Source: Octopus bimaculoides
Lineage: Eukaryota
Direction: 5' to 3'
Assembly: GCF_001194135.2 (NCBI RefSeq)
Contig: NC_068987.1
Coordinates: 89,959,461-90,023,460 of the forward strand
DNA: 64,000 nt
A program made the translations under genes and the position numbers. This document shows, one piece after another, positions 38,101-41,100 of this stretch. Each line of letters begins with the position of its first letter. Position 1 is the first letter of the stretch. Under the pieces are notes generated by a model, which was not told where the DNA came from, did not search any database, and was given only the letters and a program-made list of their open reading frames with translations.

Positions 38101-41100
38101 GAAACTGTTGCCCTTGAGTGGTTCTCAAATGGGGACCATATGGCCCTTGAGAGTCCACATCAGATTTTTGGGCTCCATACAGCAAAATAGTAAATTGGGA
38201 ATCCACAATAATATTTTAAGGGCCACTGAAAAATATTTGCTTTAGACATACGTATTGGTACGTATTGCAAGAAACAGATTTCTTTCTCTGGCATTTAACA
38301 TGATTCAACCTTCACAAATTAATGCGTGAAGACATTAATGAATAACATTCTATGAAACTAGTTTTTAAACACTGAATGGCTACGGGGGTCCACCAGAATA
38401 AAATCGCAATCAAAGGGGGTCCATAGTTAAAAATTGGTTGAGAACCCTCTGGTCTAGTTGGTTGCATCAACTAGACCAGTGCTTCACTGGTACTTGTTTT
38501 ATCAACCATGAAACAACAAAATGCAAATTGATCTCAACAGAATTTGAACCCAAAACAATAATAAAGATATTTACAATAATTTTAACGCAGTCACTATCAG
38601 GAACTGTACAAGTCACTGCACCCATCAAGAAGGATTCACCTCCACTCCGAGAAAACTGCGAAAATCTGGAAAAGAAAAGGGCGATAAAAAATTAGATGAA
38701 TTTAAGAAGTGAAATGAAGGCAGCACTAAAACGAGAAGGAAAACAACCAGAATAAATGTTTTACAATATTAAATATTGTATCTATTTTTTGAGTAGACAA
38801 ATGTTTTGGGTTGAAAAGTATGAACTGAGGTTGATTCAAGCAACTATACATCTACACCCAGTTTGTGTTTATTTAATGCAACAAGCATAAGAAATAATTT
38901 ATATGACCAGCTAAGAGCAATATTAGTCAATGACTAATATTATTTTGAGTCATTCAGAAAGTATGGGAGTTAACTCTGGATGTGTTTTGCTCTTATTAAA
39001 GCCTTCTCAGTATATTTGCTGAAGAAGAGATAATTACTAAGTAAATGTACAGTAGTGTGTACTTGTGAGCATAGATATTATGTTAGAAGAAGAAAATGAT
39101 CTGCTCTGATAACCATGTAAACCAGCATCGTCTGCTTTTTTTTGGTTGGGTTATTAACAACAGAATGGGCAACAACACTCTAGGGTCTTGTCTAGTACAT
39201 AGAAGATGAAAGGGTCACTGACAGGACAAAAATATCTGTCTACAAGGGTTGATAAATTCATCATGAGAGTAGATGGACATCCATCAAACCTACAAATGGA
39301 ATGGGGTACCCATCAAAACTTTTGAAAACTGCCATGCCAACCCCTGCGCATGGTTATCTTTCCTCTGGCCTAAGAAGGCCACTTGATAAATGAGAGGATC
39401 AGCCCAGATGGTTTAAATTAATCCTGGCCAGGATTATCATTGTGGTGGTGTTGCTATTGTAGCATTGCTAGAAATAATGGATGCCAGCCATTCATTCATT
39501 CTTGAGCTGAGTAGAAATCATCATTTAATATCCACTTTTCTATGCTTGCATGGGTCAGATGGAATTTACTGAAGTAGATTTTTCTATGTTTGGATGCCCT
39601 TCCTGTCACCAACCATCGCCTGCTTTCCAAGCAAAGAAATATTTCTCATGGAAGAACAAAAACAAACAACATTAGTTGTATGATGAAGATGCTTATCTAC
39701 AGCCATCACATGATATCAAGGCAAGGATGTATACACACACACAACAGAAAGATCTAGAAAATATTAAATACTGCATGAAAAAAACAAACAAACTATAGGT
39801 AAATGAGTGTTGACATAATTAATGCAAGAAGCTAAGAAAAAAATATTAAGTCATTGACTGATATTGTTCTGGGCAAAACTGTTTCATCTCCATCTTTATT
39901 GAAGGGGCAGGGATGAAATAATGTTTCTATGTTGATTTGGAGGATCATAAAAATGGCTGGGGTCTCACTTATGAGTTAATATCTTTTCCTTCTGGAATCC
40001 TTTAAATAATAACTACCAGTAATACACTGGAACTGACTTTTTTAATTACATCCCAACACACCTCCTACAACACTAAAACTAAGCACAAAATACTTTCATA
40101 TGAAAAAAGGTATTTTCTTTTCTGAAAGTAATTAAGAATCAACACATTTGTTAGTTTTATGTTGAGACTAATCTGTCGAGAATACTCATACAGCAGGTTA
40201 CATTTAAGGTCTGATATAAACTGGAGAAATTGATTCAAAATCTTTATATTTTGTATAATTCAGAAAGAACTCAATTGTGATATGACATTGTGGATAAGTG
40301 GATAGAATGTGCTTGTGTCTAAACTCCTAACAGGTAGATTAAAATGAGCGTGTAGACAAGTTCACAAAATGCAACTCTGATTAATCTTCTCAAATATATT
40401 TACAAAGGAATTAATTAACCGCCACTGATTTATGATATGCATTATCAGTTAATGTTAATCTGTGATATTTCAGTATAAGACACATTTTGCTTATACTTGC
40501 TCAAGGCAAGAACAAGAAGTAAAAGTACAGCAGTAGTGAGTTTTTGTGTCTAACCGTTTCACTTCATAAAGCCATTTTATTTTGCTTTTATCCTTGACAC
40601 TCTTGGGAAAATAATGATCGTCATACAATTTCCTTTGCATCTCCCATCTTTCATATTGAAAACCTCGTGCACATGAAACAAATCAATGGTCATCATAATA
40701 TATTCACAGGACACAGAATTGGTAGCATTGTTTAAATGTGGTTCGTTAGTGTTCTACTAAAAGCCATGCAGCTGTTACAGGGTGAAGAATTGAGTTGTGG
40801 TGCCATATGTCTTGAGTGCTTTGTTGCAATGGAACAGAATGTATGCACATTATGGAGTGCTGGCTGCTTTTGTTTTTTAACAAGAAATAAAGGTGACAGC
40901 GTTGGGTGGTAGTGCATTTCCTCATCTTACATGACTGAGTCTCTCGATGCTTGAGAGACAGATGATGGTGTACGTTTAACTGGGCCACGAGATAAACTGC
41001 TTCGGCATGCTGGAGATTCATTTGAAATGTCTGCTGTACACATTGGGAATATTTTGGACATGGGCCAAAATGCTAAACTACTGAAAAAGAATAGGGTTAA

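What the first reader, a model, noticed from the sequence alone, without database searches (positions are those of the whole stretch)
40931..41080. Frame-preserving 150-nt candidate cassette exon inside the conserved pre-PX segment of the sorting nexin
Seen: the intron between KKNYS(AG) and (A)[10 protein letters not shown] holds a 150-nt block with an ~80-nt AG-free pyrimidine tract, ttcag acceptor and CAT/gtaaga donor. It is stop-free only needing the phase-2 frame that the flanking exons require. It retains 4 CpGs, all in CGA/CGT/CGT/TCG codons, inside a CpG-poor intron. Skipping gives NYSRFSQF, which matches the family NxNRFSxF motif; inclusion replaces the Arg and adds 50 Ser/Arg/Pro-rich residues (ESP, RSSLS, KRTPSS). 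Established: in SNX9 the segment just N-terminal to the yoke/PX unit contributes to membrane tubulation. Inference: a lineage-specific, possibly tissue-regulated or phospho-regulated isoform of an endocytic SH3-PX-BAR protein.
Basis: partly seen in the sequence, partly recalled or inferred. Interest (0 to 1): 0.7.

Follow-up and report, generated by a model that had tools for sequence, protein, structure and literature searches.

The report
Conserved hidden exon in octopus SNX9-family gene
A 150-base block inside an intron of the octopus sorting-nexin (SNX9/18/33) gene is a genuine protein-coding exon, kept in frame in octopus, argonaut and cuttlefish but missing from every annotated or assembled protein I could retrieve, so it most likely makes a rare or tissue-restricted isoform with 50 extra residues just before the membrane-inserting helix.

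Summary
Window 41080-40931 (minus strand) is a 150-nt, phase 2-2 block, open only in the required frame, with a strong acceptor and a CAT|GTAAGA donor. It lies in the intron that splits ...KKNYS(R)|FSQF... of Octopus bimaculoides sorting nexin-33.

From this sequence alone it is not significant. About 0.14-0.5 equally good frame-preserving pseudo-exons are expected per gene, and the CpG argument is weak.

Comparative data settle it. The orthologous introns of Argonauta hians and the cuttlefish Acanthosepion pharaonis each hold a 150-nt block with the same phase, the same CAG|T acceptor and the same CAT|GTAAGAT donor.
- Octopus versus Argonauta: 86% nucleotide identity, no indel, 15 of 21 differences at third codon positions (p = 4e-4), dN/dS 0.15.
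- It is the only collinear conserved block in the gene that is not an annotated exon.
- An oyster and a limpet lack it.

All 12 cephalopod proteins retrieved (annotated models and assembled transcripts) skip it. It is therefore best read as an unannotated, coleoid-wide alternative cassette exon. It inserts 50 Ser/Pro/Arg-rich residues directly before helix 0 (the SNX9 F208/F211 equivalent).

Inclusion in mRNA, tissue regulation and phospho-regulation remain untested.

The parts
45968..46080 (-). Upstream constitutive exon (NVTNNNHQ...GTIKKNYS + AG); ends in phase 2, donor CAG|gtatgg
   Evidence: The translation is identical to XP_052825756.1. The orthologous exons in Argonauta and Sepia end AGCAG|GT.
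41082..41352 (-). AG-free zone (268 nt, 71% pyrimidine) upstream of the acceptor. It includes the polypyrimidine tract, a candidate branch site TTAAC at 41100-41096 and the acceptor AG at 41082-41081
   Evidence: The acceptor PWM score is 6.5 bits, in the top 28 of 2245 intronic AGs. The sequence is not conserved (43-47% identity to Argonauta). All three species nevertheless keep a pyrimidine-rich AG-free zone of 48-268 nt and the CAG|T acceptor.
40931..41080 (-). 150-nt cassette exon, phase 2-2. It encodes (S)[49 protein letters not shown](I)
   Evidence: Open only in this frame in three species. Octopus-Argonauta identity is 86% with no indel. Of 21 differences, 15 fall at codon position 3 (p = 4e-4), and dN/dS is 0.15. 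Octopus-cuttlefish identity is 69% at nucleotide and 56% at amino-acid level, with differences 20/4/22 by codon position.
40871..40930 (-). Donor (GTAAGATGAG at 40930-40921) and conserved downstream intronic flank
   Evidence: CAT|GTAAGAT is identical in all three species. Positions +1 to +60 are 78% identical between Octopus and Argonauta, against about 45% upstream. The donor PWM score is 7.9 bits, in the top 27 of 2337 intronic GTs.
40755..40771 (-). 17-nt perfectly conserved intronic island CTGCATGGCTTTTAGTA containing TGCATG (40770-40765), 162 nt downstream of the donor
   Evidence: Present at the aligned position in Argonauta (+171). Absent within 500 nt in cuttlefish. The chance of one or more TGCATG in 300 nt is 0.145.
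38575..38665 (-). Downstream constitutive exon, starting A|TTT TCG CAG TTT ([15 protein letters not shown]...). It encodes helix 0 and the start of the yoke/PX unit
   Evidence: It aligns to human SNX9 NKFPGFAKPGTEQYLL at the start of PDB 2RAI. F208 and F211 of SNX9 are the amphipathic-helix residues (PMC5481832).

Best explanation
Window 41080-40931 (minus strand) is a genuine, evolutionarily conserved, protein-coding alternative cassette exon of the Octopus bimaculoides SNX9-family gene (RefSeq 'sorting nexin-33').

**The two splice forms**
- The default mRNA joins 45968 to 38665 and reads ...KKNYS-R-FSQF...
- When the exon is included, the split Arg codon becomes Ser. Forty-nine residues are added, and an Ile codon is formed at the junction with the next exon. 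The net change is 50 extra residues placed directly N-terminal to the first Phe of amphipathic helix 0 (the SNX9 F208 equivalent).

**The insert**
- It has an invariant hydrophobic/aromatic N-terminal motif (L..WP.SK.FP.CT.D.SN.SP).
- It has a C-terminal basic/serine segment (VKR..SS.S..SR[DE]S) with serines every third residue, abutting helix 0.

**Most likely mechanism (inferred)**
- Regulated inclusion, in some tissue or stage, produces an isoform with altered coupling between the low-complexity region and the PX-BAR unit.
- In that isoform the membrane insertion of helix 0, and so tubulation, would come under phosphorylation control.

**Shown versus inferred**
- Shown: the exon's anatomy, its conservation in three coleoid genomes, protein-level purifying selection, and predominance of the skipped form.
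- Inferred: actual inclusion, tissue specificity, phosphorylation, and any effect on helix 0.
For: **Anatomy**
- 150 nt, phase 2-2, open only in the required frame, with canonical sites that score within the real-exon range.

**Orthologs**
- Argonauta hians: L023:39866-40015, inside the orthologous intron. Identity is 86% with no indel. Fifteen of 21 substitutions are at codon position 3 (binomial p = 4e-4). dS is 0.51 and dN/dS is 0.15.
- Constitutive exons of the same species pair: 86-94% identity, dS 0.59, dN/dS 0.06.
- Acanthosepion pharaonis: L024:43558-43707, also 150 nt, tblastn E = 5e-14, 56% amino-acid identity, only 4 of 46 differences at codon position 2.
- All three species keep CAG|T and CAT|GTAAGAT. 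Their flanking exons end AGCAG|GT and start A|TTTTC, so the phase fits everywhere.

**Uniqueness within the gene**
- Whole-gene comparison of octopus and Argonauta gives as collinear conserved blocks only the 14 in-window exons, the last exon and this block, which is 344 nt with E = 3e-63.
- The other reading frames and the plus strand carry stops, and no ATG is conserved.

**Skipping and lineage restriction**
- All 12 cephalopod proteins, including assembled RNA-seq transcripts from at least five runs, read KKNYSR|FSQF.
- An oyster has an intron of only about 157 nt at this position. A limpet has no intron there.

**Position in the protein**
- The junction aligns to SNX9 N206-K207|F208.
- F208A/F211A disable the amphipathic helix (PMC5481832).
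- SNX18 helix-0 phosphorylation at S233 negatively regulates tubulation (PMC3718966).
Against: - I could find no transcript or protein containing the exon. There were 0 hits for the peptide in 1.84 billion representative proteins, none in two word-index searches and none in metagenome contigs.
- These negatives are weak. The word index also missed the obvious orthologs, and libraries of cluster representatives hide isoforms.
- RefSeq lists one isoform for O. bimaculoides and two for O. sinensis, and none includes the exon.
- The insertion interrupts a motif (NxxRFSxF) that is uninterrupted in every animal homologue I could parse (about 105 of the 130).
- The TGCATG element is not conserved in cuttlefish.
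- Only three genomes were compared.
Confidence: 0.82

Rival explanations
1. Chance pseudo-exon: a decoy pair of good splice sites around an accidentally open frame, never used and without function.
For: In the single genome, about 0.14-0.5 such candidates are expected per gene. Ten intronic site pairs score at least as well. Its CpG count is ordinary. No inclusion product was found.
Against: Neutral intron sequence between these species cannot be aligned, yet the block is 86% identical to Argonauta and 69% to cuttlefish. Length, phase and both splice sites are preserved, and substitutions follow a coding pattern.
Confidence: 0.02
2. A conserved element that is not an SNX cassette: an intronic enhancer or ncRNA, or an exon of a separate nested or overlapping gene.
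For: Conservation runs about 60 nt past the donor, with islands further downstream. No transcript evidence ties the block to SNX mRNAs.
Against: The third-position bias and dN/dS of 0.15 indicate a translated sequence. No other conserved block in the intron could supply further exons. There is no conserved start codon and every plus-strand frame has stops. The phase-2/phase-2 fit to the flanking SNX exons holds in all three species. No Rfam family matches the site. Only the SNX gene is annotated across the Argonauta and cuttlefish loci.
Confidence: 0.05
3. A constitutive exon that annotation pipelines missed, so that the true main protein always contains it.
For: All octopod evidence for skipping comes from gene models, not from transcripts I could inspect directly.
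Against: Six independently assembled decapodiform RNA-seq proteins, five of whose contigs were read, join KKNYSR|FSQF directly. The uninterrupted motif is universal in animal homologues.
Confidence: 0.03
4. A real ancestral coleoid exon that is no longer spliced in O. bimaculoides, or is used only as rare splicing noise.
For: Absence from RefSeq models despite multi-tissue octopus RNA-seq. The -1 T of the donor is suboptimal.
Against: The octopus copy keeps an intact frame, both splice sites, a 268-nt AG-free pyrimidine zone and a conserved downstream flank. The Octopus-Argonauta comparison shows continued purifying selection across the two octopod lineages.
Confidence: 0.08

Closest known systems
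SNX9/SNX18/SNX33 (SH3-LC-helix 0-PX-BAR) and phospho-regulation of SNX18 helix 0 at S233
   Same: The host gene is a clear family member. It carries SH3, PX and BAR_3_WASP_bdg domains and matches PDB 2RAI at E = 6e-40. The cassette sits exactly at the N-terminal edge of helix 0. Mutating the helix-0 phenylalanines (F208A/F211A, SNX9) or phosphorylating the helix (S233, SNX18) alters membrane remodelling (PMC5481832, PMC3718966).
   Different: My paper search found no description of a cassette exon at this junction in any SNX9-family member. None of the animal homologues I could parse has an insertion there. The 50-residue sequence has no detectable homologue outside coleoid genomes.
Tissue-specific cassette exons next to BAR modules in other endocytic proteins, for example the BIN1/amphiphysin-2 neuronal and muscle inserts (from my own knowledge, not tested here)
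   Same: A short, frame-preserving, alternatively included exon adds a disordered or lipid- or partner-binding segment next to a membrane-bending module. Such exons typically have conserved flanking intron sequence.
   Different: A different gene family with no sequence similarity. For the cephalopod exon, tissue specificity and any effect on tubulation are unknown.
Intronic pseudo-exons (decoy splice-site pairs)
   Same: In a single genome the block cannot be told from the best pseudo-exon of the gene. Ten site pairs in the introns score at least as well.
   Different: Pseudo-exons are not conserved in sequence, frame and splice sites across deep divergences. This block is.

Membership tests
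Alternative cassette exon | Bounded by a functional-looking 3' splice site (pyrimidine tract, AG) and a 5' splice site (GT) | tested here: met
   Both sites score within the real-exon range and in the top 1-2% of intronic sites. CAG|T and CAT|GTAAGAT are conserved in three species.
Alternative cassette exon | Frame-preserving and translatable in the phase set by the flanking exons | tested here: met
   150 nt, phase 2-2, open only in that frame in Octopus, Argonauta and Acanthosepion.
Alternative cassette exon | Evolutionary constraint of coding type | tested here: met
   15 of 21 differences fall at codon position 3 (p = 4e-4). dN/dS is 0.15, against 0.06 for constitutive exons. Codon position 2 is protected in the cuttlefish comparison.
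Alternative cassette exon | Skipped in some mRNAs | tested here: met
   All 12 cephalopod proteins, including assembled RNA-seq transcripts, join the flanking exons directly.
Alternative cassette exon | Included in some mRNAs | not testable with these tools
   No RNA-seq read access. Protein and contig searches found no inclusion product, but their sensitivity for a minor isoform is low.
SNX9/18/33 subfamily (host gene) | SH3 + low-complexity region + helix 0 + PX + BAR architecture | tested here: met
   The 14-exon model translates to a protein 100% identical to XP_052825756.1. Pfam SH3, PX and BAR_3_WASP_bdg hits are on record. It matches the SNX9 PX-BAR structure 2RAI at E = 6e-40.
Rbfox-type regulated exon | Conserved (U)GCAUG within about 300 nt downstream of the exon | tested here: inconclusive
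   TGCATG lies at +162 (Octopus) and +171 (Argonauta) inside a 17-nt identical island. None occurs within 500 nt in cuttlefish. The single-species chance is 0.145.
Transposon-derived (exonised repeat) exon | Similarity of the exon to interspersed repeats | tested here: not met
   The block has no other copy in the window or in the Argonauta and cuttlefish loci. The nearest repeat copy starts at 41544.

The most novel reading that the evidence does not exclude
The exon is a coleoid-cephalopod innovation that turns the lineage's SNX9-family protein into a switchable isoform. In selected cells, plausibly neurons, inclusion would place a kinase-primed serine ladder (KR-x-x-S-S-x-S-x-x-S-x-x-S) and a hydrophobic WP..K.FP motif against helix 0. 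Phosphorylation would then gate helix insertion and membrane tubulation during endocytosis. This would be a lineage-specific regulatory layer on a core endocytic machine.
Probability: 0.2. Interest if true: 0.65.

Novelty: new member of a known kind. Interest (0 to 1): 0.5.

Why it matters
- It adds an exon and a 50-residue isoform that is missing from the gene models of five cephalopod genomes: O. bimaculoides, O. sinensis, O. vulgaris, A. hians and A. pharaonis.
- The insertion falls at the boundary of helix 0, the helix that SNX9-family proteins insert into membranes. The two isoforms therefore give a natural experiment on how the low-complexity region is coupled to the PX-BAR unit.
- The exon has been kept since the octopus-cuttlefish split. 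From memory this is usually dated at roughly 250-300 Myr; I did not test it here. That argues for a real function in coleoids.
- Methodologically, a candidate that is not significant in one genome became convincing with two orthologous introns.

Tried and rejected
**Searches that found no inclusion product**
- Protein search with the cassette plus flanks found only arthropod-like fragments at 45-51% identity. It also missed the true orthologs, so it is a weak negative.
- The cassette peptide gave 0 hits against 1.84 billion representative proteins.
- A three-species cassette profile gave 0 hits against the 5.8-billion-protein index.
- A metagenome scan with the cassette found nothing. A control scan with the next exon found only non-cephalopod invertebrate loci, so that collection holds no cephalopod DNA.

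**Steps that were blocked**
- A 41-aa query was too short for the locus finder.
- No DNA was returned for O. sinensis or O. vulgaris because the gene ranges exceed 100 kb. The chiton protein was not on record.

**Ideas tested and dropped**
- An Rfam scan of 38000-46500 found no family at the site.
- The CpG-retention argument was tested and is not significant.
- The 108-codon frame-c ORF (41072-40749) was rejected. It has a stop in the exon, a 1-nt indel in Argonauta and a stop in cuttlefish.
- An alternative terminal exon (read-through gives ...VM*) was rejected. The TAA is part of the conserved GTAAG donor and no AATAAA is evident within about 230 nt downstream (read by eye, not formally scanned).
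- My first guess for the last exon (about 18651) was wrong. The true last exon is at about 14199-14150.

**Literature**
- Searches found no description of such an exon.
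Full report
**1. The gene**

The minus strand of the window carries 14 canonical exons plus the last exon of an SH3-PX-BAR sorting nexin. The exons are 61162-61076, 53257-53183, 48748-48497, 46080-45968, 38665-38575, 37938-37816, 36131-36017, 34398-34268, 32472-32372, 26577-26474, 22442-22365, 20609-20533, 19827-19738 and 18933-18727. 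The last exon lies near 14199-14150.

The translation is 100% identical to XP_052825756.1, 'sorting nexin-33 [Octopus bimaculoides]', 568 aa. It matches the human SNX9 PX-BAR structure 2RAI at E = 6e-40. The first coding exon (MAEVR) was not found in the window.

**2. The observation**

- The upstream exon ends AGC AG|gtatgg at 45968.
- The block runs from ttttcag|TAGTTT (41080) to GTCAT|gtaagatgag (40931). It is 150 nt.
- The downstream exon starts A|TTTTCG at 38665.
- Only the required frame is open.
- Inclusion changes ...NYS-R-FSQF... to ...NYS-S-[49 aa]-I-FSQF..., a net gain of 50 residues. Of the 51 residues across the insert, 13 are Ser, 5 Pro and 4 Arg.

Two corrections apply. The AG-free zone is 268 nt, not about 80 nt, and is the second-longest of 2259 in the gene's introns. 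The other runs of about 190 nt or more are microsatellites. Part of the pyrimidine tract is a degenerate 14-19-nt tandem repeat.

**3. Is it more than chance in this genome alone?**

Not convincingly.
- I built position weight matrices from the 14 real sites. The acceptor scores 6.5 bits, with 28 of 2245 intronic AGs as good or better. The donor scores 7.9 bits, with 27 of 2337 GTs as good or better.
- Ten intronic acceptor-donor pairs 40-300 nt apart have both sites at least as good. This is the only one that preserves the frame and is open.
- A 50-codon intronic window is open with probability 0.07. Roughly 0.14 such candidates of 100 nt or more are expected per gene, or about 0.5 including short ones.
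- Four CpGs in 150 nt occur in 15% of host-intron windows and 8% of all intron windows. Real exons are only slightly richer in CpG than introns (observed/expected 0.37 against 0.26).
- A codon-usage log-likelihood trained on the real exons gives 0.058 per codon. Real exons range from -0.17 to 0.43 with mean 0.16. The value is in the top 10% of open intronic windows.
- The block is single-copy in the window and matches no Rfam family.

**4. Comparative evidence**

A full-length protein search retrieved the octopod cluster and a decapodiform cluster. The octopod cluster holds A. hians, O. bimaculoides, O. sinensis X1/X2 and O. vulgaris. The decapodiform cluster holds A. pharaonis and six Logan RNA-seq assemblies.

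All 12 proteins read KKNYSR|FSQFSR with no insertion. Five RNA-seq contigs encode that skipped form directly.

The whole Argonauta gene (L023) and the whole cuttlefish gene (L024) could be fetched.

*Argonauta.*
- tblastn finds the cassette inside the orthologous intron at E = 8e-26 and 82% amino-acid identity.
- The nucleotide block L023:39866-40015 is 150 nt with no indel and 86% identity. Its 21 differences split 2/4/15 over codon positions 1/2/3 (binomial p = 4e-4). pS is 0.37, pN 0.072, dS 0.51 and dN/dS 0.15.
- Constitutive exons of the same pair show 86-94% identity, dS 0.59 and dN/dS 0.06.
- Identity is about 45% upstream of the acceptor, 86% in the exon, 78% in the first 60 intronic bases after the donor and about 54% beyond.
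- Across the whole gene, the only collinear conserved blocks are the annotated exons and this block. At 344 nt and E = 3e-63 it is the second-strongest match after the 18933-18727 exon. All other hits are dispersed repeats.

*Cuttlefish.*
- The 24-kb orthologous intron holds L024:43558-43707. This is again exactly 150 nt and open only in the same frame.
- The peptide is SPLSLWPVSKFFPLCTSDLSNDSPQSCRNFPCRAVKRSASSISQVSRDSI, at E = 5e-14 and 56-58% amino-acid identity.
- Differences from octopus split 20/4/22 by codon position.

*All three species.*
- All keep CAG|T, CAT|GTAAGAT, a pyrimidine-rich AG-free zone of 48-268 nt, and flanking exons ending AGCAG|GT and starting A|TTTTC.
- Other frames and the plus strand have stops, and no ATG is conserved.

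*Other molluscs.*
- An oyster (L031) has an intron of only about 157 nt at this position.
- A limpet (L030) has no intron there.
- A three-species cassette HMM finds nothing in either locus.
- About 105 of the 130 animal homologues matched a junction pattern. All of them keep the (N/S)R|FSxF junction uninterrupted. The other roughly 25, including the long crustacean isoforms, could not be placed.

**5. What it is**

The block is a real protein-coding exon under purifying selection. It predates the Octopodiformes-Decapodiformes split and is skipped in every product seen so far. It is therefore an unannotated, coleoid-wide alternative cassette exon.

Direct evidence of inclusion is lacking. The peptide has no hit among 1.84 billion representative proteins, in two word-index searches or in metagenome contigs.

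These negatives are weak for three reasons. One search also failed to retrieve the obvious orthologs. Cluster representatives mask isoforms. The metagenome collection holds no cephalopod DNA.

**6. How it probably works (inference)**

The junction aligns with human SNX9 N206-K207|F208.
- F208 and F211 define amphipathic helix 0. Mutating them solubilises SNX9 and impairs clathrin-mediated endocytosis (PMC5481832).
- In SNX18, phosphorylation of S233 within helix 0 negatively regulates tubulation (PMC3718966).

Inclusion leaves [10 protein letters not shown] intact. It replaces the basic residues just upstream (KKNYSR) with ...SRDSVI and inserts 50 residues. Two parts of the insert are invariant or nearly so across the three species.
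- An N-terminal motif, L..WP.SK.FP.CT.D.SN.SP.
- A C-terminal segment, VKR..SS.S..SR[DE]S. Its serines at insert positions 41, 44, 47 and 50 form an S-x-x-S ladder downstream of a basic pair.

The most likely role is a regulated isoform in which the link between the low-complexity region and the PX-BAR unit, and the membrane insertion of helix 0, are modulated, plausibly by multi-site phosphorylation.

A hint of tissue regulation is a TGCATG inside a 17-nt island that is identical in the two octopods, at +162 and +171 from the donor. It is absent in cuttlefish. One TGCATG in 300 nt is expected 14.5% of the time.

**7. Rivals**

- A chance pseudo-exon is excluded by the conservation pattern.
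- A non-coding element, or an exon of another gene, is unlikely. The substitution periodicity, the exact phase fit in three species, the absence of a conserved start codon and the absence of other conserved blocks all argue against it.
- A constitutive exon is contradicted by the assembled transcripts.
- A relic no longer used in octopus cannot be excluded without RNA data. It fits poorly with the intact sites and the continued constraint across the two octopod lineages.

**8. Verdict**

The exon is a new, unannotated member of a familiar class, the lineage-specific alternative cassette exon. It sits at a functionally sensitive position in a well-studied endocytic protein family. Interest is moderate (0.5).

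Noticed in passing
window 41544-41600 and at least 10 other sites (e.g. 8578-8634, 44810-44866, 4223-4279, 44114-44164, 55743-55784); also 42310-42458 and 33553-33723: Several families of short interspersed (SINE-like) repeats fill the introns. Copies of the same families occur many times in the Argonauta locus (e.g. L023:35270-35336, 38193-38286, 12578-12740). The families are therefore shared across octopods.
   Followed up: partly
window 44401-44582 (-): A sub-threshold Rfam match to the plant miRNA family MIR831 (38.9 bits against a gathering score of 100, E = 2.4e-5), with overlapping weak miRNA-family hits on the plus strand. It is probably a repeat-derived hairpin, not a real family member.
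   Followed up: no
window 48497-48748 (low-complexity exon); A1 columns 130-140: O. bimaculoides has six extra residues (SYNSAT) in the low-complexity region compared with O. sinensis and O. vulgaris. Argonauta and the decapodiforms have further indels there, so this region evolves by small in-frame indels.
   Followed up: no
A1, N- and C-termini: O. sinensis isoforms X1 and X2 differ only in the first coding exon (MAEVR against MYQ-R), which implies alternative first exons. The O. vulgaris model CAI9726335.1 has an aberrant long N-terminus and a truncated, divergent C-terminus. The A. pharaonis model has a read-through C-terminus. Both look like annotation errors.
   Followed up: no
L030 (Lottia gigantea) and L031 (Saccostrea cucullata): The Lottia SNX9-family gene spans only 2.8 kb with a single intron (residues 109-551 in one exon). 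The oyster gene has about 15 exons and shares the intron position at the helix-0 junction. This suggests massive intron loss or a retrocopy origin in Lottia.
   Followed up: no
window 18727-18640: Directly after the exon ending at 18727 there are tandem donors (AAC|GTAA|GTAATC). A short downstream ORF (...[12 protein letters not shown]) misled me into placing the last exon there. The true last exon ([15 protein letters not shown]) is at about 14199-14150 and is collinear with Argonauta L023:50823-50979.
   Followed up: yes
window 41081-41075: The octopod acceptor is a NAGNAG-type tandem (cag|TAG|TTTAG). Using the second AG at 41078 would also preserve the frame, with one Ser fewer. Cuttlefish lacks the second AG.
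   Followed up: no
tool behaviour: The word-index protein search with a 159-aa query that shares 109 near-identical residues with the Argonauta/Octopus cluster did not return that cluster. The 548-aa query did. Negative results from short queries in that tool should be treated as weak.
   Followed up: partly
whole window: This is a draft-quality assembly, with many runs of N (e.g. about 560-1085, 2500-2680, 3900-4050, 15370-15660, 53660-53970, 62700-63120) and abundant (CA)n, (TA)n and (GA)n microsatellites. None of these touches the cassette or its flanking exons.
   Followed up: no
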